A stretch of DNA of 64,000 nucleotides, from positions 1 to 64,000 of IMG/VR virus record IMGVR_UViG_3300029984_000001. One strand, given 5' to 3'. Below the pieces are notes generated by a model, which did not search any database, had not been told where the DNA came from, and was given only the letters and a program-made list of their open reading frames with translations. How positions within the stretch are numbered: position 1 is the first letter of the stretch; each line of letters opens with the position of its first letter. This document shows positions 16,704 to 37,064 of this stretch, in pieces. Both the position numbers and the translations under genes were made by a program.

Positions 16704-16892
16704 TATTATTACATAGGAGGATTTTATTCTTCCTAATTTTTTTATGATTATATATTATATATATGAGTAGTATATAGAAATTATTATAAAGGAGTGTTTA
16801 TAAATGATTTGCGAGAGACTATTAAAAGATATAAAAAGACAAGATATAGGTATAGGTAAGGTAGTAAACCAGAAGGAGCGTTATTCCACTCT

Positions 16893-17219
16893 ATGATTTT
16901 AGTTGATGGTAAACGAACTGGATTGTTTACTGTTAATATGAATAATCAAACAGATAAAGTTAATATTTTTATAATACCAGAGATAGGAAATAAATTTGAT
17001 GGTAATATCTTGATATGCAAGTTAGAAGAAGACAACCGTTGTTACATATTATATAAAATACATATTTCAATTTTTGATTTATTAGAAAGTGATTACTATA
17101 GATTTTTATACTCTACAGAAATATTAAAAGATAATGAAAAAGGAATAGGAGTTGTATTTTTATCTACATTAAGAGTGAGAAAAAGAATACTTACTAGGTT
17201 TTATAAAGGAGAGATTTAA
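16893..17219 (+). CDS. Hypothetical protein, paralog of 15461; possibly the 3-prime part of a frameshifted gene starting at 16804
   Basis: NIFII..ILICKLEEDNRCYILYKIHI; a 30-codon ORF 16804-16896 with a strong RBS overlaps it by ATGA. Confidence 0.6.
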   Translation: MILVDGKRTGLFTVNMNNQTDKVNIFIIPEIGNKFDGNILICKLEEDNRCYILYKIHISIFDLLESDYYRFLYSTEILKDNEKGIGVVFLSTLRVRKRILTRFYKGEI

Positions 17220-17220
17220 T

Positions 17221-17820
17221 ATGAAAAATAATAAAGAAATTATGACATCAATGACTTTAAGATTATCTTTAGAAACAAAGAATAAATTTTCTAAATGGTG
17301 TAGAGTTGGAAATATAACTCAGGGTGATGGTTTAACTAAGTTGTTTAATAATTATAAGGGAGATAATTCAATTGATGGTATTAATGAAGATACAAATAAT
17401 ATCACTTTATTATTAAGATATCAAGATTATATAAATGATAAACATTTAGAATCAAAAAGATATATATGTAATGATGGTGAGGTTTTATATAAATCTAAAA
17501 TAAATAAAATTTATATAAATAATATTGAGGATAAATGGAAGCATACGTTATCTGAATCTGGTTATGAATTTATGTCTTATGATTTTAAATTAATAAAAGA
17601 GAATGATAAGGATAGATATTTAATTCATCAAAATTTTTATATAGGAAATGAATATAAAGCGGTATTTAATATAATGAATATACATATAGTGAAAGATTAT
17701 ATTGATATTATAAAGATAATAGAAAAATATACTAGAGAAGAAGATAAAGATAAAATTGAAATGTTGCTTGCTAAAGAAATGACCGACGAAGAATTTGAAG
17801 ATTATCTTAATAAAAATTAA
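17221..17820 (+). CDS. Hypothetical protein, possible N-terminal ribbon-helix-helix DNA-binding motif
   Basis: SMTLRLSLETKNKFSKWCRVGNITQGDGLTKL pattern; AAGGAG RBS. Confidence 0.45.
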   Translation: MKNNKEIMTSMTLRLSLETKNKFSKWCRVGNITQGDGLTKLFNNYKGDNSIDGINEDTNNITLLLRYQDYINDKHLESKRYICNDGEVLYKSKINKIYINNIEDKWKHTLSESGYEFMSYDFKLIKENDKDRYLIHQNFYIGNEYKAVFNIMNIHIVKDYIDIIKIIEKYTREEDKDKIEMLLAKEMTDEEFEDYLNKN

Positions 17821-17841
17821 ATTTAAAGGAGAGATTTAAAC

Positions 17842-19490: not shown

Positions 19491-19513
19491 AATAGGGGAG
19501 TTGTTCCCCTATT
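19491..19513 (+). terminator. Intrinsic terminator
   Basis: AATAGGGGA/TCCCCTATT stem followed by ATTTTTT. Confidence 0.75.
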
Positions 19514-19567
19514 ATTTTTTATATTACATAGACATAAACTTTGTATTAGGGAGAGGAGGGATTTAAT

Positions 19568-20085
19568 ATGTTAATAAATAGAGTTTGGAATATGCCATCT
19601 AAAAATACTTTTGAAATTCTACCTATAAAACAATTAATTTCAAAATATATAATTGGTAAAGAGGTGGTTATAGATCCTTTTGCTAATAAAAATACTATAG
19701 CAAATATAACAAACGATCTAGATCCTCAATATGATACTATATTTAATAAAGATGCTGTAGATTTCTTAAAAATAATACCATCAGATTCAGTTGATATGGT
19801 ACTATACGATCCACCTTATTCATCTAGGCAAGTGTCTGAATCTTACAAGAAATTAGGAATGAGTGTAGATAAAACTACAACTCAATCTAGTTATTGGAGT
19901 GAGCAGAAAAAAGAGATAGCAAGAGTTACAACAAAAGGTGCTATAGTTATTTCTTTTGGTTGGAATAGTTGTGGTGTGGGAAAGGTCAGAGGTTTTGAAA
20001 TTATAGAAATATTAATGGTCAGTCATGGTGTCATGGTGGGAATCATTATGATACAATATGTACAGTAGAACAAAAAATAATATAA
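19568..20085 (+). pseudogene. Compact DNA adenine methyltransferase, frameshifted near its C-terminus by an 8-bp tandem duplication
   Basis: IDPFAN and DPPY motifs; TCATGGTG duplicated at 20023-20038; removing one copy restores [18 protein letters not shown] (stop 20083-20085), like the family C-terminus HGG.HNDTI.TVE. Confidence 0.85.
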
Positions 20086-20102
20086 GAAATGAGGAATTAA
20101 AA

Positions 20103-20894
20103 ATGAAATCATATGAAGAACAATATTTAGAACTATCAGAAAACATTTTAAAAGATGGATATTATGATAATAATAGAACTGGGGTCTCTACATATAAATT
20201 ACCACATCAAATTATACAAGTTAATTTAGAAAATGAATTTCCTATATTAACATCTAAATTCGTTGCATTTAAAACTGCTGTTAAAGAGCTTCTATGGATT
20301 TTTAAAGATCAATCTAATATAGTACAAGAACTAAAAGATCAAAATGTTAATATATGGAATGAGTGGGAAATGGAAGATGGTACTATAGGAGAAAGTTATG
20401 GATGGATTGTTAAGAAATATAATCAAATAGATACACTTATAGATGCTTTAAAAAATAATCCACAAGATAGAAGAATGATGATAAATTTATGGCAAATACC
20501 ACACTTAGATAAAGGTGCTCTATATCCATGCTGTTTCCAAACCTTATGGGATGTTACTGATGGAAGATTAAACTGTATGCTAATACAACGTAGTGCAGAT
20601 ACACCATTAGGTTTACCATTTAACACAACTCAATATGCTGTACTTGTACATATGTTAGCTCAAGTAACAGGTCTAAAAGTTGGATTGTTTACTCACGTAA
20701 TAAATAATGCTCACATTTATGAAAATCAAATAGATGGAATGAATGAGCAATTATCTAGAAAGAATGATTTATATAATAGTCCTACATTTTGGATAAATCC
20801 AGAAATAAAAGATTTTTATGATTTTACATCAGACGATGTAAAACTTATAGATTATAAACATCATAGTGCAATAAAAATGCCAGTATCAGTATAA
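20103..20894 (+). CDS. thyA: Thymidylate synthase ThyA
   Basis: GAGGA RBS before ATG 20103; NRTGV, ELLWIF, LYPCCF (catalytic Cys), QRSAD..LGLPFN, HIYENQ. Confidence 0.97.
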
Positions 20895-20912
20895 AGAAAG
20901 AGGTGTAAAATT

Positions 20913-21368
20913 TTGATAAGAATTGTAGAGGATTCTATATTCAATGCAAAGGAAAATATAATTTGCCATCAAGTAAATACGCAAGCAAAAATGGGTAGTG
21001 GGTTGGCATTAGAAATGAAAGATAGGTATCCAGTGGTGTATAATGATTATATGAGACTATGTGAAAAGCATTATAAAGAGAATAAACCATTATTAGGTAT
21101 ATGTCAATTAGTATCTGTTAATAATACTAAATTTGTAGCTAATTTATTTGGTTAAGATTTTTATGGTAATGATAAAAAATATACTAATTATAATGCATTA
21201 ATAAGAGGTTTTACAAGATTATTTCTAAATGCTAATTGTGATATAGCAATACCTTATCTAATTGGATGTGATAATGGTGGAGGAGATTGGAAGAAGCTAT
21301 ATAATATAATTGAAATATTAGCAGAGGATTTTCCATATAATGTAGTAATATATAAATACCATCCATAA
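20913..21368 (+). pseudogene. Macro domain (Poa1p/DarG-like ADP-ribose hydrolase) with an internal TAA at 21153-21155
   Basis: ICHQVN...MGSGLA; reading through TAA (expected Gln in ANLFGQ) continues in frame DFYGNDKKYTNY..IAIPYLIGCDNGGGDW to stop 21366-21368, 151 codons. Confidence 0.88.
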
Positions 21369-21372
21369 ATAC

Positions 21373-21398
21373 AATATAAGGGATTAATCCCTTATATT
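21373..21398. terminator. 26-bp perfect palindrome, probable terminator of the MTase-thyA-macro operon
   Basis: AATATAAGGGATTAATCCCTTATATT. Confidence 0.65.
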
Positions 21399-21567
21399 TC
21401 ATAAACTGGTTAAATATAATAAAAAATAATTACGTAATTCACATTAATTTAAAAGAAATAAATCCATAATTAGATTCGTAATTATAAATAAGAACTAATA
21501 ATCGTAGATAACTGATAAGAACAGACAAGAAGGGAGTATCAATATAAAATGTAAATGGGGTATATAA

Positions 21568-21981
21568 ATGAATAAAAATGATTTATTAAAATCCATATCA
21601 GAACAAAACAGAATATTACATAAAGTATCAGAAAACAATACTCATGAAATAAAATCTACAAGTAGATTAAAAACATTATCACTTACATTAAAAGTAGAAG
21701 AAACAAGATTACCTAAACCTAATGGAGTAATGCCTATAATAAAAACATTACAAAATATATCAGAAGAACTATATATAAGTACTAAAGAATTAGTAAATAA
21801 GGATAGATATAATCTAAGAAGAGTAACTAAAGAAATACAAGATTACTCATTAGAGATGGTAGAATTAATACAATCTTATAATAATTACATAAGATTTATC
21901 ATGGATAATGATATGAAGATTGAAAAAACAATAGATGAATTTACAGAAGAAGATATAAAAGAATGGTCTAAACCCAAATAA
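21568..21981 (+). CDS. Hypothetical helical protein
   Basis: 137-aa ORF with GGGG RBS and a downstream hairpin. Confidence 0.6.
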   Translation: MNKNDLLKSISEQNRILHKVSENNTHEIKSTSRLKTLSLTLKVEETRLPKPNGVMPIIKTLQNISEELYISTKELVNKDRYNLRRVTKEIQDYSLEMVELIQSYNNYIRFIMDNDMKIEKTIDEFTEEDIKEWSKPK

Positions 21982-22032
21982 CTATATAAAGGAGTATTTA
22001 ACTCCTTTATATTTTATATCAAATTTATTTAT

Positions 22033-22045
22033 AATTGTATATTAT
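22033..22045 (+). promoter_or_regulatory. Early-type promoter motif
   Basis: AATTGTATATTAT upstream of the 22104 operon. Confidence 0.6.
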
Positions 22046-22103
22046 AGTATTGTAAACAGTATATTGTATATAAATAAATTATAATGAAGAGGAGACGATT
22101 AAA

Positions 22104-22706
22104 ATGACAGTAATTTTAGGAGTAGTAGACAAGAGAAGCAAAACGGTACATATCATGGGTGATTCAATGGTTAGTAGAGGCGAAAGTATTGCATATGAAA
22201 TTAATAAAATTTGGACTTCTAATGATTTTGTAATTGGAAGTGCTGGTTCATTAACTATGATACAATCATTAAAAAGACAATTACATTTTCCATCACAAAA
22301 AGATATTGAAGATAATAATTTGACTATTGATATTGATTTTATGGTAAATCAATTATGTCCAGCAATCAAACAATTAGTCAAAAATAATAATTTATCTGAA
22401 AATGATTTAGCTGATATTCTAGTAGGATATAAAGAAGACTTATATTACATAACATCATATTTTAACGTAATAAAAATAAGAGAGTATCAATCTATAGGTT
22501 CTGGTTGTACAAGAGCAGAAGCAGCATTTCAAAATTCAAATATACAAGATATAGAAAAAGCATTATTCCATTCAATATTATATGCTACAAAAAATATAAG
22601 ATCTTGTAGTATGCCTGCTTATTGCATAAACACTAAAGATAAACAATTTAAGAAATACGATTCAAATGGACATTGGACATTAAGTAAGGTTGATGAACAA
22701 TGGTAG
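22104..22706 (+). CDS. Proteasome-beta/HslV-like Ntn threonine protease
   Basis: M-T-V-I start (Thr1 after Met removal), GDS, NKI, IGSAGS, SIGSG motifs. Confidence 0.75.
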   Translation: MTVILGVVDKRSKTVHIMGDSMVSRGESIAYEINKIWTSNDFVIGSAGSLTMIQSLKRQLHFPSQKDIEDNNLTIDIDFMVNQLCPAIKQLVKNNNLSENDLADILVGYKEDLYYITSYFNVIKIREYQSIGSGCTRAEAAFQNSNIQDIEKALFHSILYATKNIRSCSMPAYCINTKDKQFKKYDSNGHWTLSKVDEQW

Positions 22707-23284
22707 GCAATTATATATTCTTAGACATAGATGGAGTACTTAGTACCTTTAGATTTATAGATTATCAAGTAAAAAATCATGAATGTGCTCATGAAGATGC
22801 AGACTTAAATTTTGATCCTATATGTATGAAAAACTTAAAACTATTAATGTCATATATGAATAATCCTAAGATATGTATATCTTCATCATGGAGAAATAGT
22901 AATACTGGTTTAAAAGATATAGAATTAAATTTAGAATTATATAATATCATATTTGATAAACTATATGAAACTCCAGACTTAAGTAAATCATCAAGAGCTG
23001 ATGAGATACATAAATTTATAACAGATAATTATATTGATATTAGATTATCTAATATAATTATACTAGATGACGAAGATATTATTGGACATGACTTAGAAAA
23101 GTTTCATATTAAATGTGATGATTATAATGGTTTTAATAAGGAATGTTTAAAAAAAGCTGCTGAATTAATAGATAAAAATAGAAGATTAATTAAATCAAAT
23201 ATAGAAAAATTAGCACCACCAAAACCTAAAGCACCAGAACCAAAAGCTATTAAAGAAAGTATATTTAAATTAAAATGGAGGTAG
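22700..23284 (+). CDS. HAD-superfamily phosphatase (HAD_SAK_2-like)
   Basis: IFLDIDGVL, ISSSWR, IILDD. Confidence 0.85.
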   Translation: MVGNYIFLDIDGVLSTFRFIDYQVKNHECAHEDADLNFDPICMKNLKLLMSYMNNPKICISSSWRNSNTGLKDIELNLELYNIIFDKLYETPDLSKSSRADEIHKFITDNYIDIRLSNIIILDDEDIIGHDLEKFHIKCDDYNGFNKECLKKAAELIDKNRRLIKSNIEKLAPPKPKAPEPKAIKESIFKLKWR

Positions 23285-23290
23285 ATTATA

Positions 23291-23605
23291 ATGACATTTT
23301 ATGAATTTGGAATTAAAGATTTAGTAAGTAAAGGTATGTTTGATATTCAAGCAACAGAAGTTATGAATAGAGTAGTTATAGATAGTAAAAATAAAGATAG
23401 TGCTAATAATGCAATGAATGGTAGATGGGATGATAAAGTCGAAGATTATCCACCTACAATGTCAGTGGTATTATCTATAGCAATAGAACCAATCGCATTA
23501 GAATGGATAAAAGATACATTACCTGAAGCTTGGTTCAGACCAATGTTTGATAAAGATCATCCTGTAAGAAAACAATTCGAAGAAAATAAGAAGGGGGACA
23601 AATAA
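23291..23605 (+). CDS. Hypothetical protein
   Basis: GGAGG RBS. Confidence 0.65.
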   Translation: MTFYEFGIKDLVSKGMFDIQATEVMNRVVIDSKNKDSANNAMNGRWDDKVEDYPPTMSVVLSIAIEPIALEWIKDTLPEAWFRPMFDKDHPVRKQFEENKKGDK

Positions 23606-23606
23606 T

Positions 23607-24692
23607 ATGTCAGAAGTAAAACAAGTTATGAATCCTGTAGTTAGATATCAATTAGAAGATAGAGAAAACTCAGAATTTTTAACAGATGTAGGTACACCTA
23701 AAGATATATATGAACAATTGTTTACCGAAGAAGAGATAAAAGATCTAAGTTTATCATATTTGTCAATGGACGATGCTATGAGTATTGCAGTTGAAAAGAA
23801 GAATGTAAAATTTATACCTATTCATGAAATAGAAACATGTATTCATGGAAGTACTAGTAATTTATATAATTTCACTTCAACTGAGGTTACTCTAAATAGT
23901 CCAACAAGTGTAAATACAACTAATATATCACCTTTACATATAAATGGTCAATTGATTACTCATATAGAATTCATTGGACCTGATTTAATTACAACACATA
24001 AATATTTCTACAATACTGGAGATGAGTATACACCTAGTGGGTTAGATATATCATTCATACCTAACTGGTATAATTTGGTTGTTAAAGAAAAATTTATCCC
24101 AGAAGACAAAGGTCATATTCAATATGATATTAATGATCGAATAATGAAAATAATATTGGATGGAAAAGAATACGTAGTTCAATATATTATGCATGGAATT
24201 AGAATATTAGATGAATGTAGAGAGATACTTTCTATATCTAAAAGAATATCTAATGAAGATATGTATATTCATTTAAAAGTATTTCTAAAGAATATACAAG
24301 AAAATAATATAGTTGAAGATGAACCTGATCCACAAATAACTAATATACCTTTAATATGTCTTGATGATATGAATGATATAGACTCATCTGTTATAAATTC
24401 AGCTATAAAATTATATTCAGAAAATCGTAATAAATTATGTACTTTTAATAGTAGATATATTTCTGATAACAGAGGCTTTGCTAGTCTAGAAAATAACAGA
24501 ATATTATGTGATATAAATTCATATCATTTTCATAAAGATCAATCTGATGAAGATAATATGATTACTATTACTTTAGAAGATGCTAATAAATTGAATTTTG
24601 ATATAACAGCTTATTCTGCTTATTTTAAATTGAAAAATACAAACGATTCAAAAAAATGGATTGAAGCTATATTCTTGTTAGAGAATAATTAA
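23607..24692 (+). CDS. Hypothetical protein
   Basis: 361-aa ORF with AAGGGGG RBS. Confidence 0.7.
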   Translation: MSEVKQVMNPVVRYQLEDRENSEFLTDVGTPKDIYEQLFTEEEIKDLSLSYLSMDDAMSIAVEKKNVKFIPIHEIETCIHGSTSNLYNFTSTEVTLNSPTSVNTTNISPLHINGQLITHIEFIGPDLITTHKYFYNTGDEYTPSGLDISFIPNWYNLVVKEKFIPEDKGHIQYDINDRIMKIILDGKEYVVQYIMHGIRILDECREILSISKRISNEDMYIHLKVFLKNIQENNIVEDEPDPQITNIPLICLDDMNDIDSSVINSAIKLYSENRNKLCTFNSRYISDNRGFASLENNRILCDINSYHFHKDQSDEDNMITITLEDANKLNFDITAYSAYFKLKNTNDSKKWIEAIFLLENN

Positions 24693-24707
24693 TTGGAGGA
24701 ATGAATT

Positions 24708-24881
24708 ATGAAAAATTTAAATAAAGACAACTTATCATTTTTAGCTGGAGGTATTTTATTAGGGCTAGCTATATCGAAAGGTATTGAAAAAGTCAAAGAG
24801 ATGATTGTTAAAGAGAAAATAGAAGAGGTTAAAGAAGATTTAGATAAATTAGAAAAGCATATAGAAGAAGTAACAAACTAA
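24708..24881 (+). CDS. Small membrane-anchored coiled-coil protein (not in ORF track)
   Basis: GGAGG RBS; MKNLNKDNLSFLAGGILLGLAISKGIEKVKEMIVKEKIEEVKEDLDKLEKHIEEVTN*. Confidence 0.7.
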   Translation: MKNLNKDNLSFLAGGILLGLAISKGIEKVKEMIVKEKIEEVKEDLDKLEKHIEEVTN

Positions 24882-24932
24882 ATATAAAAGAGGACTCTTT
24901 TGTCCTCTTTATTTTTTGAGGAGGAATTTAAT

Positions 24933-25829
24933 ATGAATATTATAAATAAAATAAAAGGTATGTTTAAAAAGGAAAATAATAAGGAAGGTGAAGTTTATTC
25001 TGAAATTATATATATGAACGATCATATATATAATATATCTACAGCTTTAGGGATGGATATAAAATCTACATATGAAGACAGAGTCCAATATATGATCAAT
25101 AATATAAAAGATGAATCTTTATTTTATTTGTCCAATATCATAATGTATGTAAAAGCTTCTTATAATAATACTAATCTTTTAGAATTCATACCATTATGTA
25201 GTAATATGAAATATATATCAGCACAAGCTATAGATATAGAAAAAGGGGAAATTCACTTTTTAATGTGCGGAGATATTTCTCATTATAAAAATTTATTTAG
25301 AAATTCCGATAATGTGAATAATAAAATATTATTATCTGTAAAAGAACAATTATATCAAGTAGAATCAGTTTATTTTAATGACTTTATAAAAGATGGATTA
25401 ATGAAATATGATTCGTTCTTAAATTATAACCCTACAGAAAAAATAAACATGACATTTAGACAAAATGGGTTTACTATCTTAGATATAGACAACTATGATA
25501 AGATTCAATATATATTGAGACAAAAAGAAATATTTAAAGATATACAATTCAGATCAATATTAGACCTACTAACCATAACATTCAAAAGTCAATCTGAGGT
25601 TCTTAATATTCCTTATAAGGAGATATATAAAGAGTTTAATGAAGATCTACTTGATACTATTAAGGATAGTGTTTTAGATTATATTAATCATCCTGATAAT
25701 AGCACAAGGGAGACTATAGAAACAATATTACAACCATCATATAAAAAAATGATAGAATATGCTGATAAAAATGTAGAGCAAAAAGAATTTTATGAAGATG
25801 TAGATGAAGTAGTAAACTATATAGATTAA
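24933..25829 (+). CDS. Hypothetical protein
   Basis: GAGGAGG RBS before ATG 24933. Confidence 0.7.
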   Translation: MNIINKIKGMFKKENNKEGEVYSEIIYMNDHIYNISTALGMDIKSTYEDRVQYMINNIKDESLFYLSNIIMYVKASYNNTNLLEFIPLCSNMKYISAQAIDIEKGEIHFLMCGDISHYKNLFRNSDNVNNKILLSVKEQLYQVESVYFNDFIKDGLMKYDSFLNYNPTEKINMTFRQNGFTILDIDNYDKIQYILRQKEIFKDIQFRSILDLLTITFKSQSEVLNIPYKEIYKEFNEDLLDTIKDSVLDYINHPDNSTRETIETILQPSYKKMIEYADKNVEQKEFYEDVDEVVNYID

Positions 25830-25877
25830 AATATAAATATAATTGTATATTATAATAATGTAAAGGAGAACCATAAT

Positions 25878-26174
25878 ATGAAAAAGTTTATGAATAGAGA
25901 ACCAAATATAATAAAGGAGGATATATTAACAAATTTAGAATTAAGAAAAAACATAATAAGTTTAAATGAAATTAAACCTGTTGAAATACCATTAAATTCT
26001 ATTAATAGTGAATATATTGGGTCTGATTTTTATAATATAATGTCACTACTAGGTCCATATATTAAACTCATGATAAATACTAACAATATAACAAAAGAAA
26101 CTTTATTGGAATTAAAAGATACTGGAAAATTAACTCAATATGATTATGATAAATTAATTTATTATGTAAAATAA
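25878..26174 (+). CDS. Hypothetical protein
   Basis: Early motif at 25841-25853 and AAGGAG RBS. Confidence 0.65.
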   Translation: MKKFMNREPNIIKEDILTNLELRKNIISLNEIKPVEIPLNSINSEYIGSDFYNIMSLLGPYIKLMINTNNITKETLLELKDTGKLTQYDYDKLIYYVK

Positions 26175-26191
26175 ATTTATGGGGGATTTAT

Positions 26192-27575: not shown

Positions 27576-27580
27576 TAGTA

Positions 27581-27610
27581 AAGAGAGGATTAGTTTCCTC
27601 TCTTTATTTT
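27581..27610 (+). repeat. 30-bp direct repeat copy 1 (terminator hairpin)
   Basis: AAGAGAGGATTAGTTTCCTCTCTTTATTTT, identical to 28608-28637. Confidence 0.9.
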
Positions 27611-27623
27611 AAAGGAGATTATT

Positions 27624-28620
27624 ATGATAAAAATTGATGAAAAACACACTAGTTTAGATTATATGAAATTTATATATAATATTATAACTACATTTAAAAT
27701 GAATGATAAATCTATAAAACATTTTAGAATAAATGTTCAGTTAGGTGAAGATGTAGATATGAGAGTATCTTATGTATATGGAGATTATATGTTATTTGAT
27801 GTGATAGATATAATAATAGATAAGGATATAAATAAACTTGTAGAAAATATAGAAAAATCATCTCCTGATTTTATAAAATTTATAAGTTCTTTAATTAAAG
27901 AACCTACAGTTTTTGATTTATTGATTATTACTATTTTACATGAAATCGGACATTTAAAATTATCATTAAAATTATCTAATAACGACAAATGAGATTATAT
28001 GAACAAGATTAACCATACCTTAGAAGTTTCTATAGAAAATATATTCAATTCATCAGAAAAAAAATATAGATTATTGGTACAGACTATTACCAAAAGAGGT
28101 ATACAGTGATATGTATGCTTATTCTAATTTTATAAAAGTACATAAGATGTTAAATAAAGAAAAAATAGTAGATAGTATAATAGAATTACCACACTTATTA
28201 GAAGACAGATCTGATGTTAATATAGTAAATAAAATAATATCACAAAAATTAAATTTTAATAAATATATTATTACATATGGTAAAGAAAATATAATAAACA
28301 CAAAAGAAAAATCTATTAAGATAAATTTGAAAGGAAATTTAAAATATAAAAAAGAATTAGATAATTTTATAAATAGTTTTGGTAATCAAAAAAGAGTAAT
28401 TCAAAGTCTTATATATAAATTATCAATATTACAAGAATATATATTCCTTGAAAGTGATTTATATTATATTTATAGAAATTTATTAAACAATATTGGAACA
28501 TGTTTTGATTTGGAAGTAATTGATATGAATAGATATGCTGAATTGATGGCAGTAATAAATTTATTTGAGTATATTGATAAAATAAACAAAGTAGATATAT
28601 CTGATTTAAGAGAGGATTAG
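27624..28620 (+). pseudogene. HExxH metallopeptidase gene broken by TGA (27990-27992) and a +1 frameshift in an A8 run (28057-28064)
   Basis: ILHEIGHL in the first ORF; repair gives ..DK*DYMNKINH..SEKNIDYWYRLLPKEVYSDMYAY.. joining the 28111 ORF, with the YRxxPxE..D..A third-ligand pattern; 331 aa repaired. Confidence 0.7.
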
Positions 28621-28637
28621 TTTCCTCTCTTTATTTT
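28608..28637 (+). repeat. 30-bp direct repeat copy 2 (terminator hairpin)
   Basis: Identical to 27581-27610. Confidence 0.9.
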
Positions 28638-29336
28638 TTACATTTAATATAAAATAATTATAGTTATCTGTTTAGAAAATAACAATATAGGTATATACAT
28701 ATCATTTGGTATATGGTTTATATGTTTTCACAGCTATCCCAAATAGGTACTAAAAAGTAGTTGTAACTTTCTATTGTTAGATTCACATAAATGTAAAAGA
28801 TAAAACACAAATAGAAAAGTAAATAGATTAATAAATAAATCATTAGAAAAATATATTATTAGATAATAAAATTCATTATTATAGATACAAATAAATAAGA
28901 AAATCATAAACCACATTTATTAATCAGAATGATTAATAAATAAAATTGAACTTGAATATAGCATAATACAACAGTTCAACTGAAATACAAGCAAAGATAC
29001 TGACTTGGTCTTCAGACCAAGTAAAATGAAGAACGATACTGATATTCCATAGAAAGTTTTAGTATAGATAATAAGAATGAGAAAACAATAACTTATCATA
29101 TTGTATTGGCTTATGACGATTTCAATATAGAAGAATATTTAAATAAAAAGATGAAAACTGAAGGAATAACATCATTTGAGATATCTAGAATAGTATCTAA
29201 CAAAGAACAATAATTATACTATTACGAATAATTGATAAGGGTTTACACTCTTATCTTTTATTTTTTATATATTTAGTATATTATCTATACTTATCAAATA
29301 GATAAGCTGAATAATATATTTATATACATAAGGACA

Positions 29337-29348
29337 AACATTAGATTA
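29337..29348 (+). promoter_or_regulatory. Late-type promoter AACA-N6-TA for nrdD
   Basis: AACAttagatTA upstream of the AAGGGAG RBS. Confidence 0.55.
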
Positions 29349-29379
29349 CAATATATAGAAGAAAAGGGAGATGTGTATT

Positions 29380-30012
29380 ATGAATATTATAAAAAGAGAT
29401 GGAAGAAAAGAAGTAGCAGTATCGCATAAAATAATAAATGCAATGATAATGTCTACTAATGGTCAAAAAGGATATGATCATTATAAATTAACATGTTTGG
29501 GAATGAGTTGTTTAGATGAAATAATAGAAAAGTATGGAAATGATTCTACAATAGAAGTAGACACAATTCATGATGAAGTAATAGATTTTTTAAAGAAAAA
29601 TCATTTATATGAATTAGCAATAAACTATTCTGAATATAGAGATGATAGATCTAAATGTAGGATGAAGAATAGTGAATTAATGAAAATGGTATCAGGTTTA
29701 TCAAAAGAAACTAATCGTGGAAATGCAAATGTGGGTAATAATTTTAGTTCGAAATTATTAATGATTGCATCTGGTGCAAATAAATGTAGTGTACTAGGAG
29801 AAATGCCAAAAGAAATAGCAAGACTTCATGAAGTAGGAGATCTATATTATCACGATTTAGATAGTTTTAACCTTACCACAAATTGTTTACATATACCAGC
29901 AGCTAAGACACTTAGTAAAGGCTTTAACACTGGTTATGGATACATTAAACCTCCCCAAAGGATAGAATCAGCATCAGATTTAATCTGTATACTAATACAA
30001 TCCGTACAGAAT
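29380..30012 (+). CDS. nrdD: Anaerobic ribonucleoside-triphosphate reductase, exon 1 (ATP cone)
   Basis: MNIIKRDGRKE ATP cone; GDLYYHDLD..NCLHIP; ends IQSVQN. Confidence 0.92.
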
Positions 30013-30508
30013 AATTGAATTGTTCCCTCATATGGTAACATATGTTGAATAACCCTGTGAACCTAGATATCTAGGGTGTGTATATAAGTCTAGAGATATA
30101 TGCTAACGGTAGAAGTGAAATAAGATTGATTGCACGACAATTGTAATCCTTTGAGAAATAAGCGAATAAGCTTCGTAAGAGAGCCTGAAGATCCTTTGAT
30201 AACTTCTAAGGATAGCTGGTAATAGCCGTGCTAAATTACATAATTAATATTATGTATAAATGTGAAACGAGTATCTGAAATCTATACACTAAGAGTTGTC
30301 TTAGTTGAAAATAAGGTATTAGAAATAATACACGAAGAAAGTAAGAGTAGGGATAAGTTTAGAGACTTATATGGTATATAATAATTGGTTTTATTATATG
30401 TCACCGAAGTGCAGGGTATCCTATAACAAATACTTATAGGATAATGATATAGTCTAGTCCGATAATTTTAAATTATGTTAAAGTATCACGAAAGTGACGG
30501 TATAATAG
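30013..30508 (+). mobile_element. Group I intron 1 in nrdD (496 nt, no ORF)
   Basis: Splicing joins QSVQN to DQYGGVSIPDLD in frame; exon ends in U with U-G at G30022 (P1 GAAU/GUUC); terminal G30508; ATGATATAGTCT S element; GAAA-capped P9. Confidence 0.9.
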
Positions 30509-31018
30509 GATCAATACGGTGGAGTAAGTATTCCTGATCTAGATAATACGTTAGGATTCTTTGTAAATCTAACAAAAGCAGAAATTCTAGAAGAAATGAA
30601 TGAAGATGAAACAGAAGTAACAAAAGACAAATTAGATAGAAAAGTAAGAAAGAAAACTAGACAAGCTATGCAAGGTATTTGTTATAATCTTAATACAATG
30701 CATTCAAGAGCTGGTTCACAAGTTCCTTTCTCTTCAGTTAATTTAGGATTACCTTTAGATGATGACGCTGCATTAGTGTGTGAGTTATTTTTAGAAGAAT
30801 TTGATAAAGGAATGGGAAAAGGAAGTCCTCTAATTTTTCCTAATGTTGTCTTTACTGTTAAAGATGGTGTAAATAGGAAAGAAGGAGACCCTTATTATTA
30901 TCTATATAAATTAGCATGTAAAGTTGCATCTAAGAAGATGAATCCAACTTTCTTAAATATAGATGCTGATTTTAATTTAGAATATTATAATAAAGGTATT
31001 GTTGCACAAACTATGGGT
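30509..31018 (+). CDS. nrdD: NrdD exon 2
   Basis: DQYGG..NLNTMHSRAGSQVPFSS..IFPN..AQTMG. Confidence 0.92.
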
Positions 31019-31464
31019 TAGGTTACGAGCAGCCCATATAAAACCTCATGAACCTAGAAATCTAGGGTGTATATACGAGTCTAGAAGTATATGCTAACGG
31101 TAGAAGTTGAATAAGATTGGTTATAGAAAAGTGATTATAACCCTACTAGAAATAGTAGTCCATAAACGAAGTAGCTTCGTAAGAGAGCCTAAGGTCCTTT
31201 TTTAATAAGGATAGCTAGGGAATACCGTGTCTGTTAATATAATTTTTATTATAAAAATGAGATGTAACGACTAGTTGAAATCTATATATCAGAGAGAAAT
31301 ACTTTGATTGAAAATAAGGTATAATTAACATTATACACGAAGAAAGTAGACGTAGCAAGAAACTCGGTGAAAGTCCGTAATGCGAAGTATGAGGCTTATT
31401 ATATATGGTAACAGTATATAATAATGAAGAGATAGTCTGTTTAATATTAAAATATTATTAAGCG
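31019..31464 (+). mobile_element. Group I intron 2 in nrdD (446 nt, no ORF)
   Basis: Splicing joins TMG to CRTQVLS; perfect P1 AUGGGU/GCCCAU (G31032); P7 AACGACUA/UAGUCU; terminal G31464. Confidence 0.93.
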
Positions 31465-32433
31465 TGTCGTACTCAAGTATTGTCGAATATAAACGGGTCT
31501 GCTGGACCTACAGGTAGGGGGAATATTGGAAATACAACGATGAATCTACCAAGATTAGGAATCTTATCTAATAATGATATAGATAAATTCTTTGAATTAT
31601 TAACAAATTTATTAGAAGAATGTAAGAATTCCTTACTATATAGAAAAGATGTATTATCAAATCTAAAAGTAAAAGATCTACCATTTATAGCAGGGCAAGA
31701 ATTATTCTTAGGATCTGAAGGATTAAAAGAAACAGATTCTATATTACCTATATTAGAACAAGGAACTTATGGTATGGGATTTGTAGGGTTAGCAGAAACT
31801 CTAGTAGCTTTATTAGGAGTGCATCATGGACAAACATTAGAAGCTAGAGAATTAGGTGAAAAAATAAATGGTTTTATAAGAGAGAAAGCAGATTATTATA
31901 CTACTAAATACTCCTTAAATTTCAGTGCATATGCTTCTCCAGCTGAGGAAGTATCTGGGAAACTTTGTAAAAGTGATATAAAGAAATTTGGTATTATAGA
32001 GGGTGTAAATGATAAAGAATTCTATACAAATGGATTTCATATACCTGTAGATTTCCCTATATCAATTATGAATAAAATACAAATAGAAGCACCTTATCAT
32101 AAAATGTGTAATGGTGGTCATATATCATATATAGAGGTAGATGATTATCCAACTCCAAAATTAGTTGAAAAGGTTGTAACAAAATCATTCACTGAAACTA
32201 ATATAGCTTATATAGGAATCAACTTTCATATAAGATATTGTAAAGAATGTGGAACTCTTTTACATGGAGAATCAAAATGTGATTGTGGGTCTACTAGTAT
32301 TCAAGGTATTTCTAGACTTACAGGATATTTAGGTCTTGATGAAAGATTTGGAGAGACAAAATCAAAAGAAAGATCTTTAAGAATTAATCATAATTCAGAT
32401 CATGCAAAAGTATATAATAATGTAAAGAAATAA
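31465..32433 (+). CDS. nrdD: NrdD exon 3 (spliced product about 703 aa)
   Basis: CRT thiyl Cys, GRGN, GFVGLAE, YTNGFH, GGHISY, CKEC..CDC zinc site, SRLTGYLG glycyl-radical loop. Confidence 0.93.
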   Translation, partial: CRTQVLSNINGSAGPTGRGNIGNTTMNLPRLGILSNNDIDKFFELLTNLLEECKNSLLYRKDVLSNLKVKDLPFIAGQELFLGSEGLKETDSILPILEQGTYGMGFVGLAETLVALLGVHHGQTLEARELGEKINGFIREKADYYTTKYSLNFSAYASPAEEVSGKLCKSDIKKFGIIEGVNDKEFYTNGFHIPVDFPISIMNKIQIEAPYHKMCNGGHISYIEVDDYPTPKLVEKVVTKSFTETNIAYIGINFHIRYCKECGTLLHGESKCDCGSTSIQGISRLTGYLGLDERFGETKSKERSLRINHNSDHAKVYNNVKK

Positions 32434-33222: not shown

Positions 33223-34518
33223 ATGAGGGAGAGATTTATTATGTGTAAACAAAAAGACTTAGTACAACAATCAATTGAGGATAAAACATATTCAAATTTT
33301 CATGAGGCTATTAGAAAAATATTTACAAAAGAATACTTCTATAAAGATTATGTTGATAATTTTACTGAACATGAAAAAACTTTTTTAATTAATCTTAAAG
33401 ATTTAAGAGTAAGACTTAGAGAATTCAATTATCCAGTACATAATATAAGTAGGCTTGGTGAATATAATGATTATAAAGATATTTTTGTAGTATATCATGA
33501 AGCTGATATAGATGGTCATAGTGTAAAAATAATCAACGGTCTATTAAATAATGGTGATATGTCTAATACTTTTGGTTGTGATGTAAGAGCTGATGAAGCT
33601 TTTGATATTATAAAAGAAAAATTAGATGAAGGTATGTTTGTAATAGTTGCAGATTTAAACTTTACAGAAGAATATGCTGAAAGAGTAGAAAATGAATTAG
33701 ATACTTCAAGATTTATATTATTAGATCATCATGGACATGCTATGTATTTAAATCAATATGATTGGGCTTTTGTGTTATCTCATGATGAAGAAAGTTTATA
33801 TTTATCTTCTGGTACTTTATTGTATTCTATGTTTTGTGTTGCTAACTTTAATTGCAATTTAATATTAGATACAATAATAGATTTAGCAATGAATACTGCT
33901 TTGTATGATACTTGGTTCTGGTCTTCTAATTTTGATTATACTAGAGAATTATCTGAAAAGTATTTTGGTAATAGACCAGAAGATATATGTATGTTATTTA
34001 AATCTATGAGTAAAGATAAATATGCTCAACATGTTTTAAATAATATTAATAATTTTCATGATATATTTGATAATGATGATAAATTAAAAATAAAATTTAT
34101 GAGAGATATGACTAGAAAAACTATTTATAGATATTACCATAATATGAGAATAGTAAACATTGATGATAAAAAGATTGGAATAGTATTTGGAGATAATGAA
34201 GTTTCTGCTGTTGGTAATTTTATTTTAAGAGCTAATAGAGAATTATCTTATTTTGCTATGGTAAATTTAAATAGTAATCAAATATATCTTAGATGTAGAA
34301 ATGATTATGATGTAAAAGAAATTGCTATTAGGAATGGTGGAGGAGGTCATACTCAAGCTGCTGGATTCCCTATGATTGATATATTATTTAATGATAAATT
34401 CTTAATAGATTTATTATCAAAAACACATCAAGTAGAAGAAGATTGTTTAGCATCTATTAAAATGATAAAAGATTGTGCAGAATTTGATGAAGATACTAAA
34501 GTATATAGATTAAGATAA
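33223..34518 (+). CDS. DHH/DHHA1 phosphoesterase (nanoRNase/NrnB-like)
   Basis: YHEADIDG, ADLNF, LDHH, GGGHTQAAG. Confidence 0.88.
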   Translation: MRERFIMCKQKDLVQQSIEDKTYSNFHEAIRKIFTKEYFYKDYVDNFTEHEKTFLINLKDLRVRLREFNYPVHNISRLGEYNDYKDIFVVYHEADIDGHSVKIINGLLNNGDMSNTFGCDVRADEAFDIIKEKLDEGMFVIVADLNFTEEYAERVENELDTSRFILLDHHGHAMYLNQYDWAFVLSHDEESLYLSSGTLLYSMFCVANFNCNLILDTIIDLAMNTALYDTWFWSSNFDYTRELSEKYFGNRPEDICMLFKSMSKDKYAQHVLNNINNFHDIFDNDDKLKIKFMRDMTRKTIYRYYHNMRIVNIDDKKIGIVFGDNEVSAVGNFILRANRELSYFAMVNLNSNQIYLRCRNDYDVKEIAIRNGGGGHTQAAGFPMIDILFNDKFLIDLLSKTHQVEEDCLASIKMIKDCAEFDEDTKVYRLR

Positions 34519-34593
34519 TTAGTTATTTATTCTAGGAGGATTTCTATCTTCCTAGATTTTATATGAATAAATTTTTAAGAAGAGGTGTATTAA

Positions 34594-35692
34594 ATGAAAA
34601 AATTATTAAAAAATATTAACAAACAAGAAATTAAAAAGAAAGCTATTATGGGTGCAAAAGCAATGATTGTTAGAACAGTAGTAAGAGCTGTTACTAATAA
34701 ACAAAATAGAAAGAGATTATATGAACTATGTATTAGATAATACAGCCGAAGGTCTATATATAAATCAATATAATCATAGAGAAGATTATAATAATATCAT
34801 TGTATGGTTATATAGTTTAAATAATAAAAATCTAAATAATAATATAAATACAACTGTAACTTCATATGGAAATAATAGTACTATTAAAGATGGTACTTAT
34901 AAAATAATACATAATAAATGTTTGATAATAGTAGAGGCAGGTCATCTTGGTCTTGATCAAGAGACTTCTATATATAAAGAAATTAAAATAAATATATTAG
35001 GTTCTAATAATAAAACCATTATAAAAGATGCTTATAAAACTATTAAAATAGATAGTGAATCTTGTATCCAATTAGAAAGAAGAAATGGACAACCTGTATC
35101 CATTGCTAAAAGAAAATTAGATACTATATTTAGTGATCAATTTGATGAAATAAATAATCTAATAATAAAATGGAAGGATCAACAAGATGTATTTAGAGAA
35201 CATGGTATGGCATTTAAAACAGGTATATTGTTACATGGGGTTCCAGGAACAGGAAAGACTTCTATAGTTAGAGCTATAGCTACAGAATTTAATATGAATA
35301 TAATGTATGTTAATGTAGCTACAATAAAAGCTCAAGATATAGACTATATCAATATTAGAAATAACAGTATTTTACTATTAGAAGAAATAGATTTAATGAA
35401 AGATGACGAAGATTATAAAAAGAAAGTAAGTTCTTTATTATCTTTATTAGATGGAATTACAAGTCCTAATAATTGTATCATAATAGCAACAAGTAATTAC
35501 ATAGATGCAATTGATGAAAGACTAGTGAGAAAAGGTAGATTTGATAATATAATAGAGGTTACTAATATTTGTAGACATACCGCTATTAGAATGTGTGAAA
35601 GTTTCAATATAGATCCTGTACTTGTATTAGAAGAGGGTAAAAAATCTTTTAATCCTAGTGAATTACAAGATAAAATATTAAAAATAATATAA
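34594..35692 (+). pseudogene. BCS1-like AAA+ ATPase copy 1; probable +1 frameshift near 34721 (ORF 34721-35692 retains the whole AAA domain)
   Basis: GILLHGVPGTGKTS, LLEEID, LLDG, ATSN..D..L.RKGRFD; strong AAGAGGTG RBS lies before ATG 34594 (48-codon ORF), weak before 34721. Confidence 0.7.
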
Positions 35693-35710
35693 TCATAATG
35701 GGGTGTTAAA

Positions 35711-37064
35711 ATGAATAAAACTGTAATAAAAGAATTTTTAATTAAAGAAGCGAAGAAAGAAATCAAAAAACAATTAGTGAATACTATATTTAGTAATAAT
35801 AATAAAAAGAAAGTAAAAGATTTAATATTCTCGAAAATATCATCATCTTATAAAGTATCTACAGTTAAAAATACTATATCATTAGAATATAAATTCTTAA
35901 TACACTGGATTAGAGATATAAAAAATAAAGAACTTTATAAAAATTTAAAACAATTCGAAAATAATGATGTCATGTTATTAGAAAATGGGGAATATAAAAT
36001 ATTATATGAAAATAATTTAATATTAATAAAATCATATACAGATGATATGTACATATAATATAATAATAGATGTTATTGGTAAAACAGGTAAAGAAATTGT
36101 TGAAGACATCATAGAATACATAGTTTCTAGTATTAAGAATGTTAGAAACACTAAAAAAGATCCAGACAGTATATACATAGATTATAAAAGATTTCCTACA
36201 GACGATTATTATATTTCAATATTAGGAAGAAAATTAGAAACTATATATTCTGAACAAATTGATGATATAATAAATATTATATGCAATTGGTCTAATGATA
36301 GTGATATATATCATAAACATGGACTAGCATTTAAAACTGGTATTATATTACATGGTGTTCCAGGAACAGGAAAAACCTCGATAGTTAAAGCCTTATCAAC
36401 ATATTTCGCCATGAATATGATTACATTAAATATAGCTTCTATATCTGCTAAAGATTTAATAAAATTTTCTCAACAAATAAGAACAGATGAAAATAAGATA
36501 GTATTATTAGAAGAAATAGATTTAAGAGATTCTGATGAAAAAGATAAAAAAATGCAAGAACTACTAACTCTATTAGATGGGGTTGATGGAGTAAATAATA
36601 TAATATTTATAGCTACTACTAATGATATTGATGGGGTTGATGTACGATTAAAAAGACCAGGAAGGTTTGATAATATAATCGAGATTACAAATATAAATAT
36701 AGATTTAGCTACTAAAATGTGTGAAAGTTTTAAAGTTGATTCTAATATAGTATTAGAAAATTATAATATTAAATTTCCTAATTCAGAAAAATACAATCCA
36801 GCTACATTGCAAGCAGAAATATTAAATGAATATCATAAACAAAAATCAAATATAAATAATATTGTAAATATAGACAATATTAACCTTAAAAATAAATCTA
36901 ATAATAAAACTTCATGTAAAGCTGAATATACACCATCATCTTATATAGGGGAGGTAAATTCGTTTAATATAAATAAGGGAGTAGATAATAAGTGGAATTC
37001 AAACGGACACCGTATTTATGGTTCTGAACCAATATATGATGAAAAGATAATAGCAACTAATTAA
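35711..37064 (+). pseudogene. BCS1-like AAA+ ATPase copy 2, split by a frameshift at about 36050-36060
   Basis: ORF 35711-36058 aligns with the N-domains of copies 1 and 3 (W..GEYKILYENNLILI); ORF 36042-37064 has no RBS but carries GVPGTGKTS/LEEID/RPGRFD. Confidence 0.8.

What the first reader, a model, noticed from the sequence alone, without database searches (positions are those of the whole stretch)
16804..36060. Cluster of single, repairable lesions confined to accessory genes
Lesions: MTase (8-bp duplication), macro domain (TAA), HExxH peptidase (TGA plus A8 slip), AAA copy 1 (+1), AAA copy 2 (frameshift), possibly 16804, and a P7 mismatch in intron 1. The 8.7-, 5.2- and 2.5-kb core ORFs are intact. 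Uniform sequencing error would hit the long genes too, so this suggests recent relaxed selection or slippage-based on/off switching of an anti-defence arsenal.
Basis: partly seen in the sequence, partly recalled or inferred. Interest (0 to 1): 0.6.

Follow-up and report, generated by a model that had tools for sequence, protein, structure and literature searches.

The report
Recently broken accessory genes, jumbo phage
Five dispensable genes of a 264-kb peat phage carry real, very recent inactivating mutations, two of them still varying between samples, so this is natural gene decay caught early and not sequencing error or a proven on/off switch.

Summary
The window is the first 64 kb of a 263,571-bp AR9/PBS1-like jumbo phage from peat metagenomes. 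Five of the seven claimed lesions are real. The methyltransferase has an 8-bp tandem duplication. The macro-domain gene has TAA in place of a near-invariant Gln codon. A zincin-like HExxH gene has an in-frame TGA plus a shift at an A8 run. AAA ATPase copies 1 and 2 each carry a +1 shift. In every case, uninterrupted homologues or a family profile align across the break. The "16804" break is ambiguous, and the intron "P7 mismatch" is unsupported.

The lesions are not errors. Independent assemblies from other samples are 100% identical, and each broken form is found on 11 to 40 contigs. They are recent. AAA2 is intact in five samples whose contigs differ from the window only by one T. The methyltransferase has dN/dS 0.02 against an intact relative.

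The 8-bp unit occurs in 1, 2 and 3 copies, which is the only hint of slippage. No in-frame revertant was found in the near-identical lineage, and the A8 run never varies.

The genome uses the standard code and has no tRNA genes. More decayed genes lie outside the window.

Verdict: genuine ongoing pseudogenisation of accessory genes. The cause, neutral or selected, is unresolved.

The parts
19568..20085 (+). Small N6-adenine DNA methyltransferase (DPPY motif), frameshifted by an 8-bp tandem duplication (GTCATGGT at 20022-20029 and 20030-20037). The present ORF ends at 20068. The ancestral frame ends at 20083-20085.
   Evidence: phrog_11619 E 1.5e-38, matching only profile positions 21-162 of 186. 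Nine homologues end ...HGGNHNDTIxTVExK, which equals the window's shifted frame (A1). Intact 169-aa allele P0127/L036; 3-copy allele P0126/L117.
20913..21368 (+). Macro-domain gene (151 codons) with an in-frame TAA at 21153-21155 (codon 81).
   Evidence: The read-through P0001 aligns in one stretch (residues 2-149) to phrog_335, E 6.5e-33. Homologues of 150-165 aa carry PF01661. Codon 81 falls on the near-invariant Q of NLFGQ. The closest homologue resembles the DarG macro domain.
27624..28620 (+). Zincin-like HExxH gene (about 331 codons) with two lesions: TGA at 27990-27992 and a +1 shift at the A8 run 28057-28064.
   Evidence: Homologues P0222 (341 aa) and P0223 (303 aa). The N part matches their residues 3-120. 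The frame-2 part from 28066 matches P0222 residues 155-341, E 1e-23, and the conserved DYxYRLxPxE motif lies upstream of the ATG at 28111. Open-frame and codon-usage tests agree.
34594..35692 (+). AAA ATPase copy 1, split 48 + 323 codons by a +1 shift somewhere in 34686-34740.
   Evidence: The read-through P0124 aligns in one stretch (residues 16-340) to phrog_7485 positions 20-377, across the break. It is split in every contig seen, including those with intact AAA2.
35711..37064 (+). AAA ATPase copy 2, split 115 + 340 codons by a single inserted T at 36048.
   Evidence: Intact 450-aa allele P0137 on 5 contigs from 5 samples. The only difference from the window over up to 7.2 kb is the absence of T36048, plus one SNP in L032. 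The read-through P0125 aligns across the break to phrog_7485.
37080..38252 (+). AAA ATPase copy 3, intact paralogue used as reference.
   Evidence: PF00004 E 5.9e-25; alignment A2.
16804..17219 (+). 30-codon ORF overlapping (ATGA) a 108-codon ORF. This is the claimed 'possible' frameshift and remains ambiguous.
   Evidence: Three-frame reading. The paralogue N-terminus alignment is not significant. No longer allele appears in the cluster.
29371..32433 (+). Anaerobic ribonucleotide reductase nrdD in three exons (29371-30012, 30509-31018, 31465-32433), with two group-I-like introns (30013-30508, 31019-31464). No lesion is shown.
   Evidence: The exons match PF13597 positions 2-100, 101-263 and 264-562. 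Rfam Intron_gpI matches are below threshold: 23.1 bits (E 0.0028) and 17.4 bits. The two introns are 74% alike.
282..9014 (-). Intact 2910-aa ORF with glucosaminidase, NlpC/P60 and M23 domains.
9888..15116 (+). Intact 1742-aa ORF: GNAT acetyltransferase fused to an RNA polymerase beta-like subunit.
54508..56973 (+). Intact 821-aa virion structural protein.
   Evidence: phrog_20751 E 1.1e-50

Best explanation
These are genuine, recent loss-of-function mutations in dispensable accessory genes of a nearly clonal population of an AR9/PBS1-like jumbo phage living in peat.

Ordinary mutations have each interrupted a gene that is uninterrupted in its relatives:
- one nonsense substitution, most simply CAA to TAA, in the macro-domain gene;
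- one TGA;
- single-base insertions in AAA1, AAA2 and an A-run;
- one 8-bp tandem duplication in the methyltransferase.

The phage has no way to read through them: it uses the standard code and has no tRNA genes. The products are therefore truncated or split. The long virion and transcription genes stay intact because broken alleles there are not viable.

The lesions accumulated one after another. The AAA1 break is shared by all contigs. The AAA2 break is still polymorphic between samples. The methyltransferase repeat is still changing copy number.

Shown: the lesions, their presence in many samples, their recency and the polymorphism. Inferred: that the products are non-functional, and that the genes are dispensable in the present host.
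For: Homologues or family profiles align across each break.

Independent assemblies are identical to the window:
- IMG/VR UViG_3300030114_000003: 100% over 16133-44249.
- Ga0302209 contig: 100% over 10133-30891.
- Logan contigs of two further runs: identical over 27001-29646 and 27022-28421, including the TGA and the A8 run.
- The broken protein forms occur on 11-24 contigs each. The index lists the broken methyltransferase in 41 blocks of the collection and the AAA2 N-terminal fragment in 34.

Recency:
- The intact AAA2 allele sits in 5 samples and differs only by T36048.
- Methyltransferase against the intact relative L036: dS 0.54, dN 0.011, dN/dS 0.02.

No recoding:
- Stops of long ORFs are TAA 139, TAG 39, TGA 14.
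- The whole genome has no tRNA genes.

Ten neighbouring genes that are intact in the window were looked up as a control. The eight found in the collection show only full-length variants, apart from two shorter forms (90 and 230 aa) whose cause was not checked.
Against: - Function of the truncated products was not tested. AAA1 keeps a 323-codon ORF with its own ATG, and the methyltransferase loses only its last 15 or so residues, so some activity could remain.
- Raw reads were not available. Only per-run contigs could be laid, so minority intact alleles within a sample cannot be excluded.
- All samples are peat metagenomes deposited in 2019, possibly from one site, so 'fixed' may mean fixed locally.
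- My screen for broken genes outside the window was less sensitive than the reading inside it, so the apparent enrichment in 16.8-37 kb is uncertain.
Confidence: 0.8

Rival explanations
1. Selected loss. The genes were knocked out because their products had become liabilities. For example, they might be sensed by host abortive-infection systems, or DNA methylation might attract a methylation-dependent restriction enzyme. On this view the breaks are escape mutations that swept through the population.
For: - Several independent knock-outs reached high frequency in a population with almost no other variation.
- Each gene carries only one or two lesions and no other decay. The methyltransferase shows strong past constraint.
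- Laboratory escaper phages are often mutated in the gene that the defence system senses (abstract of 10.1101/2022.08.27.505566).
- The broken AAA2 allele is in more contigs than the intact one.
Against: - No host, defence system or fitness measurement is available.
- A bottleneck with hitch-hiking of neutral or slightly harmful mutations gives the same picture.
- The contig counts are not allele frequencies.
Confidence: 0.25
2. Reversible phase variation. Slippage at the 8-bp repeat of the methyltransferase, and at the A8 run of the HExxH gene, switches the genes on and off.
For: The 8-bp unit is found in 1, 2 and 3 copies. The 3-copy contig L117 is otherwise identical to the window over 1,296 bp. 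One of only seven A8 runs in the genome lies at the HExxH shift.
Against: - The 2-copy and 3-copy states are both out of frame.
- No 1-copy or 4-copy allele was found in the near-identical lineage, among 24 or more contigs.
- Relatives have a single copy, so the repeat is not a conserved device.
- The A8 run shows no length variant in about 20 contigs and two laid runs.
- The HExxH gene also has a TGA that slippage cannot repair.
- The macro, AAA1 and AAA2 lesions are not in repeats.
Confidence: 0.08
3. Sequencing or assembly artefacts in the consensus.
For: One lesion lies in a homopolymer (A8). The genome is a metagenome assembly.
Against: Identical lesions appear in JGI, ENA (MEGAHIT) and Logan assemblies of many different samples. 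An 8-bp duplication and two stop-creating substitutions are not typical error types. The alternative alleles are themselves reproducible across 5 samples.
Confidence: 0.02
4. Programmed recoding. Stop read-through and +1 ribosomal frameshifting produce the full-length proteins.
For: Both AAA shifts are +1, and each can formally be placed at the zero-frame TAA.
Against: - That placement follows from how a +1 overlap is read, so it carries no weight.
- The AAA2 shift is absent from an otherwise identical allele.
- The two shifts sit at different positions of the protein (codons 49 and 116).
- AAA3 and the family profile are contiguous.
- The genome has no suppressor tRNA.
- TAA is the commonest stop codon.
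Confidence: 0.03

Closest known systems
Unitary pseudogenes, meaning recent loss-of-function alleles of accessory genes in microbial and viral populations
   Same: There are single point lesions in genes whose homologues are uninterrupted. Past purifying selection is still visible. Intact and broken alleles segregate. Essential genes are spared.
   Different: Tailed phages are usually thought to purge dead DNA quickly. Here five broken genes persist within 20 kb of a 264-kb genome, with one possible deletion variant of the HExxH gene.
Phase-variable methyltransferases of bacteria (phasevarions), switched by simple-sequence repeats
   Same: A repeat inside a methyltransferase ORF changes copy number in nature and shifts the frame.
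   Different: There are only 2-3 copies of an 8-bp unit. The repeat is not conserved in relatives. No ON-length allele was seen in the same lineage. The gene is phage-borne and has no partner restriction enzyme.
AR9/PBS1-like jumbo phages of Bacillus and Staphylococcus
   Same: - The large terminase is 33-38% identical to theirs.
- It has a multisubunit-type RNA polymerase beta-like gene.
- It has many group-I-like introns and HNH homing endonucleases.
- The genome is about 250-265 kb and has low GC.
   Different: It is only distantly related. It encodes thymidylate synthase, so uracil DNA is doubtful. It has no tRNA genes. It is known only from peat metagenomes.
DarG-type macro domains, the antitoxin of the DarTG system
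   Same: The closest homologue of the broken macro gene (77% identical) matches the PADLOC DarG profile over its whole length, E 8.4e-14.
   Different: It is a stand-alone 151-aa domain without the DarG C-terminal part and without darT. The window's copy is truncated at codon 81.

Membership tests
Recent pseudogene (loss-of-function allele) | Homologues encode one uninterrupted protein spanning the break | tested here: met
   Methyltransferase A1; macro A3 and phrog_335; AAA1 and AAA2 against phrog_7485 and P0137; HExxH against P0222 and P0223. Not met for '16804'.
Recent pseudogene (loss-of-function allele) | The lesion is in the DNA, not an artefact | tested here: met
   Identical in independent assemblies and runs.
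Recent pseudogene (loss-of-function allele) | No recoding machinery that would read the lesion | tested here: met
   All three stop codons are used as stops. The genome has no tRNA genes.
Recent pseudogene (loss-of-function allele) | The product is non-functional | not testable with these tools
   Inferred from the loss of conserved segments only: the methyltransferase C-terminal HGGNHNDT motif, the macro C-terminal half, and the HExxH conserved DYxYRLxPxE block being out of frame.
Phase-variable (contingency) gene | Repeat tract whose length varies within a lineage | tested here: met
   Met for the methyltransferase 8-mer only: 2 versus 3 copies in otherwise identical DNA. The A8 run is invariant.
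Phase-variable (contingency) gene | Both in-frame (ON) and out-of-frame (OFF) lengths occur in the same lineage | tested here: not met
   Only the 2-copy and 3-copy alleles, both OFF, occur in near-identical DNA. The 1-copy allele belongs to an 88%-identical relative. Contigs can hide rare variants.
Phase-variable (contingency) gene | The repeat tract is conserved among relatives | tested here: not met
   All nine aligned homologues have a single SHGG.
Programmed ribosomal frameshift or read-through | The shift or stop is conserved in relatives at the same site | tested here: not met
   The intact AAA2 allele lacks it. The paralogues and the family are contiguous. Macro homologues have Gln at the stop position.
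Macro domain (PF01661) | Significant match to the family profile | tested here: inconclusive
   The window's read-through gave no Pfam match at E 0.01 or below. It matches phrog_335 at E 6.5e-33, and its homologues at 35-47% identity carry PF01661.
Zincin metallopeptidase | HExxH motif in a zincin fold with a third metal ligand | tested here: inconclusive
   The HEIGH motif is invariant in the three homologues (A4). The Atlas look-alikes are small zincins (Tox-MPTase3, SprT-like, Zincin_1, M78) at lead-level scores. There is no Pfam or PHROG match.
Group I intron (the two nrdD insertions) | Exons join to a complete gene; U before the 5' splice site and G at the intron end; catalytic core | tested here: inconclusive
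   The exons tile PF13597 exactly, at profile junctions 100|101 and 263|264. The boundaries are ...AAT|...TAG| and ...GGT|...GCG|. The Rfam Intron_gpI matches are below the gathering score, at 23.1 and 17.4 bits against 50. The joined coding sequence was not built or searched.

The most novel reading that the evidence does not exclude
The 8-bp repeat in the phage's orphan adenine methyltransferase is a working contingency locus. Copy number would move between 1, 2, 3 and 4, toggling DNA methylation. Part of the phage population would then be protected from classical restriction and part from methylation-dependent restriction. That would be a phasevarion-like bet-hedging switch carried by a virus. 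A broader version of the idea is that the serial knock-outs are escape mutations from host sensors, seen sweeping in nature.
Probability: 0.08. Interest if true: 0.65.

Novelty: new member of a known kind. Interest (0 to 1): 0.35.

Why it matters
Tailed phages are assumed to keep compact genomes with almost no pseudogenes. This is a natural, uncultured jumbo-phage population in which the order and recency of gene inactivation can be read directly. One break is fixed, one is segregating between samples, one repeat is still expanding, and one gene may already be deleted in a variant.

It gives a concrete system for asking whether accessory or counter-defence genes are lost neutrally or by selection. 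It also carries two practical warnings. Automated annotation splits these genes into fragments. One public gene call read the TGA-broken gene with genetic code 4, which produced a spurious 'intact' protein.

Tried and rejected
- Alternative genetic code: rejected. All three stops terminate long ORFs. The only 'TGA=W' protein, P0131, is the same DNA mis-called with code 4.
- Suppressor tRNA: none in the window or the genome.
- Close relatives in the phage database by DNA: none.
- Synteny in phages whose thymidylate synthase is 57-80% identical: they lack these accessory genes, so they gave no comparison.
- Word search with the HExxH read-through: blank. The exhaustive search was needed.
- Four-letter-word read-throughs with TGTA and TACA: not unique, so discarded.
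- Paralogue BLAST for the AAA N-termini: too diverged.
- Paralogue support for the 16804 frameshift: not significant.
- P7 of intron 1: I could not assign P7 for this intron family from five copies. From my recollection of the R and S core consensus, which is a lead and not a test, intron 1 has GUUUAGAGACUUAUA and GAUAUAGUCU, which would pair over 5 bp without a mismatch.
- Pfam and PHROG on further candidate broken genes at 216.7, 238.2-239.1 and 245.0-245.9 kb: no support.
- Raw-read allele frequencies: not obtainable. All 24 runs are kept as contigs only.


Full report
WHAT THE WINDOW IS

The 64-kb window is the first quarter of a 263,571-bp IMG/VR virus record that CheckV rates as complete. 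GC is 25.8% and there are no Ns. Its large terminase is 33-38% identical to those of Bacillus phages BpSp, Goe21 and AR9/PBS1 and of Staphylococcus jumbo phages. The 1742-aa ORF is a GNAT acetyltransferase fused to an RNA-polymerase beta-like subunit. The 2910-aa ORF carries cell-wall hydrolase domains. The 821-aa ORF is a virion protein.

The stretch 19500-29400 is held by 24 public runs, all labelled peat metagenome and dated 2019. Long ORFs end in TAA (139), TAG (39) and TGA (14). Neither the window nor the genome has a tRNA gene. The genome therefore uses the standard code, and I named no other code except X at breaks.

THE LESIONS, ONE BY ONE

1. Methyltransferase, 19568-20068. GTCATGGT stands twice, at 20022-20029 and 20030-20037. 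The ORF matches phrog_11619 only up to profile position 162 of 186. About 2,600 homologues of 166-175 aa exist, and they align to only 93% of the query. Nine that I aligned end in HGGNHNDTIxTVExK, with H, N, D and T nearly invariant. The window encodes exactly this ([17 protein letters not shown]) in the frame reached by dropping one 8-mer. This is a real frameshift that replaces a conserved C-terminal motif.

2. Macro domain, 20913-21368. Read through with X at the in-frame TAA (21153-21155), it aligns in one stretch to phrog_335 (E 6.5e-33). It also aligns to 150-165-aa proteins carrying PF01661. The X falls on the near-invariant Gln of NLFGQ, so CAA to TAA is the simplest change. The downstream half has no start codon.

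3. HExxH gene, 27624-28620. Family libraries and the word search were blank.
   - Intrinsic tests favoured one gene. The frame stays open for 38 codons after the TGA (P 0.0035) and for 27 codons before the ATG at 28111 (P 0.018). Codon usage favours frame 1 and then frame 2.
   - The exhaustive search then found two homologues of 341 and 303 aa.
   - The N part matches their residues 3-120. The frame-2 part starting at 28066, which is upstream of the ATG, matches residues 155-341 of P0222 (E 1e-23). A conserved DYxYRLxPxE..AD.Y.Y block begins right after the A8 run.
   - This is therefore one gene of about 331 codons with two lesions. 'Peptidase' is only a lead. HEIGH is conserved in the three proteins, and the Atlas look-alikes are small zincins.

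4. AAA1 and 5. AAA2. With X at the shift, each read-through aligns as a single stretch across the break to phrog_7485 (AAA1 residues 16-340, AAA2 residues 69-399). Both also align to the intact paralogue AAA3.

6. '16804'. The 30-codon ORF and the 108-codon ORF overlap by ATGA, which is a normal coupled junction. The similarity of the upstream piece to the N-terminus of the paralogue at 15461 is no better than shuffled sequence. This one is left open.

7. 'P7 mismatch in intron 1'.
   - The three nrdD exons, searched exon by exon by reference, match Pfam NRDD positions 2-100, 101-263 and 264-562. I did not build or search the joined sequence.
   - Both insertions follow a U and end in G. They are 74% alike, and they share a core with three more copies near 65.3, 103.5 and 186.8 kb.
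   - Rfam's group I model matches only below threshold.
   - I could not assign P7 reliably, and a mismatch-free pairing can be drawn, so there is no evidence of a lesion.

THE LESIONS ARE NOT ERRORS

- IMG/VR contig UViG_3300030114_000003 is 100.000% identical to the window over 16133-44249.
- A Ga0302209 contig is identical over 10133-30891.
- Logan contigs of runs X4 and X6 are identical over 27001-29646 and 27022-28421, including the TGA and the A8 run.
- Each broken protein fragment is on record from 11 to 24 contigs assembled by JGI, ENA and Logan.
- The index lists the broken methyltransferase in 41 blocks of the collection and the AAA2 fragment in 34.
- All runs are kept as contigs, so minority alleles within a sample cannot be seen.

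Seven uniformly placed events miss the three long ORFs with P = 0.125.

THE LESIONS ARE RECENT, AND TWO ARE POLYMORPHIC

- A 450-aa intact AAA2 (P0137) is encoded on five contigs from five other samples. Over 1.7 to 7.2 kb, four of them differ from the window only by the absence of T36048, plus one SNP in L032. The fifth adds an 18-SNP patch at 35344-35455.
- AAA1 is split in these contigs too, so its break is older.
- The methyltransferase cluster holds a 169-aa intact allele (P0127) on a contig 88% identical in DNA. Against it the window gene has dS 0.54, dN 0.011 and dN/dS 0.02 over 153 codons. It was therefore under strong constraint until recently.
- That relative co-occurs with the broken lineage in sample ERZ27248528.
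- A 163-aa form (P0126) comes from a contig identical to the window over 1,296 bp except for a third copy of the 8-mer.
- No intact near-identical allele was found for the macro gene (best hit 77%), AAA1 or the HExxH gene.
- P0131, which looks like a TGA-to-Trp allele, is the same DNA called with code 4.
- Of ten neighbouring genes that are intact in the window, the eight found in the collection show only full-length variants, apart from two shorter forms (90 and 230 aa) whose cause I did not check.
- The HExxH locus may also vary in structure. One low-depth X12 contig joins 27538 to 28789, which would remove the gene. L119 breaks off at 27929. X6 and X9 hold contigs with other flanks around 27870-28048.

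BEYOND THE WINDOW

A TerL-like paralogue is 45% identical to residues 24-372 of the intact terminase, carries an in-frame TGA, and is truncated. It lies at 181890-182933 on the minus strand, next to the intact gene. A homing-endonuclease remnant at 209070-209682 is split and internally deleted.

Three further candidates, at 216.7, 238.2-239.1 and 245.0-245.9 kb, have no homology support. Decay is therefore not confined to 16.8-36 kb, but it is confined to redundant or dispensable genes. My screen outside the window was cruder than the reading inside it, so any enrichment is uncertain.

MECHANISM

The best reading is ordinary mutation filtered by selection, in a population with very little other diversity. 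Breaks in essential genes are removed, while breaks in dispensable genes drift or sweep.

Whether the losses are neutral (relaxed selection, a bottleneck) or favoured (escape from host systems that sense these proteins, or from methylation-dependent restriction) cannot be decided here. Laboratory escapers commonly carry mutations in the sensed gene (10.1101/2022.08.27.505566, abstract seen).

Switching is supported only by the copy-number variation of the 8-mer. Both states observed in the lineage are out of frame. The repeat is absent from relatives. The A8 run never varies. The other lesions are not in repeats.

Programmed recoding is contradicted by the intact AAA2 allele and by the contiguous family members.

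The 'anti-defence' label is plausible for the orphan methyltransferase and for the macro domain, whose closest homologue matches the DarG macro profile (E 8.4e-14). The AAA proteins give only generic AAA matches such as IetA, and the HExxH protein gives none.

The broken genes sit in separate units bounded by terminator-like hairpins, 17 found against 2.0 expected.

HOUSEKEEPING

- The metagenome scan returned some contigs from human-gut metagenome assemblies. I took none of them for human DNA. They were used only in one local tblastn screen and gave no hits.
- Read-throughs used X at every break.

Noticed in passing
window 30013-30508 and 31019-31464; genome about 65313-65412, 103545-103642 and 186794-186879 (minus strand): A family of at least five group-I-like introns shares a core of about 90 nt. 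Two are in nrdD. One lies just upstream of an RNA polymerase beta-prime-like fragment (AADFDGD motif, 65442-65918). Rfam's group I model sees them only below threshold.
   Followed up: partly
genome 181890-182933 (minus strand; L024): A second, 45%-identical copy of the terminase ATPase half lies next to the intact terminase (179257-181473). It has an in-frame TGA and has lost the nuclease half. It may be a remnant of gene exchange driven by a homing endonuclease.
   Followed up: partly
genome 209070-209682 (L025); paralogues at 65996-66805, 119699-120445 and 167400-167969: This is an HNH/AP2-type homing endonuclease family. The copy at 209 kb is frameshifted and lacks its middle part.
   Followed up: partly
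window 21436-21555 and genome 139650-139769: A 120-bp non-coding stretch downstream of the macro gene is repeated at 96.7% identity 118 kb away. It could be a regulatory or promoter cassette.
   Followed up: no
window 27583-27606 and 28608-28631; also 16714-16735 and 34531-34556: Nearly the same hairpin (AGAGAGGATTAGTTTCCTCTCT) stands on both sides of the HExxH gene. Related AGGAGGA...TCCT hairpins bound other units. Terminator-like sites number 17 against 2.0 expected.
   Followed up: partly
window 27538-28789, 27870-28048 and 27929: The HExxH locus shows structural variants in other samples. One low-depth contig skips the whole gene, another breaks off into unrelated sequence at 27929, and others have different flanks around an identical 179-bp core.
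   Followed up: partly
window 35344-35455 (L031): One contig has 18 SNPs within 112 bp at the 3' end of AAA1 and is otherwise identical. This looks like a short recombination tract from a relative.
   Followed up: no
window 53964-54086: A 30-bp unit is repeated 4.1 times at 98% identity, in frame, inside ORF 53596-54435, giving a Lys-rich 10-residue repeat.
   Followed up: no
window 9888-15116: The RNA polymerase beta-like subunit carries an N-terminal GNAT acetyltransferase domain (residues about 250-335), which is an unusual fusion.
   Followed up: no
window 20058-20894; whole genome: The phage encodes thymidylate synthase although its nearest cultured relatives (AR9, PBS1) use uracil DNA. 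It has no tRNA genes despite its 264 kb.
   Followed up: no
L118 (same DNA as window 27572-29311): A public gene call on a 1.7-kb contig used TGA=Trp, producing a 167-aa 'intact-looking' protein (P0131) from the broken gene. This is a pitfall for allele surveys.
   Followed up: yes
genome 216676-216915, 238242-239146 and 245014-245866: These are open frames with coding-like composition but no start codon, or with long overlaps with the upstream ORF. They may be further broken genes, but they have no homology support.
   Followed up: partly
window 28621-29358: A 738-bp stretch upstream of nrdD has no convincing gene. It contains a 50-codon open frame without an ATG (...YHIVLAYDDFNIEEYLNKKMKTEGITSFEISRIVSNKEQ) that could be the tail of a decayed gene.
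   Followed up: no
window 16580-16602: A perfect 10-bp tandem duplication (GGATGTAATT, 2.3 copies) lies inside ORF 15966-16703. By composition it may be chance, and I did not check whether it shifted the ancestral frame.
   Followed up: no
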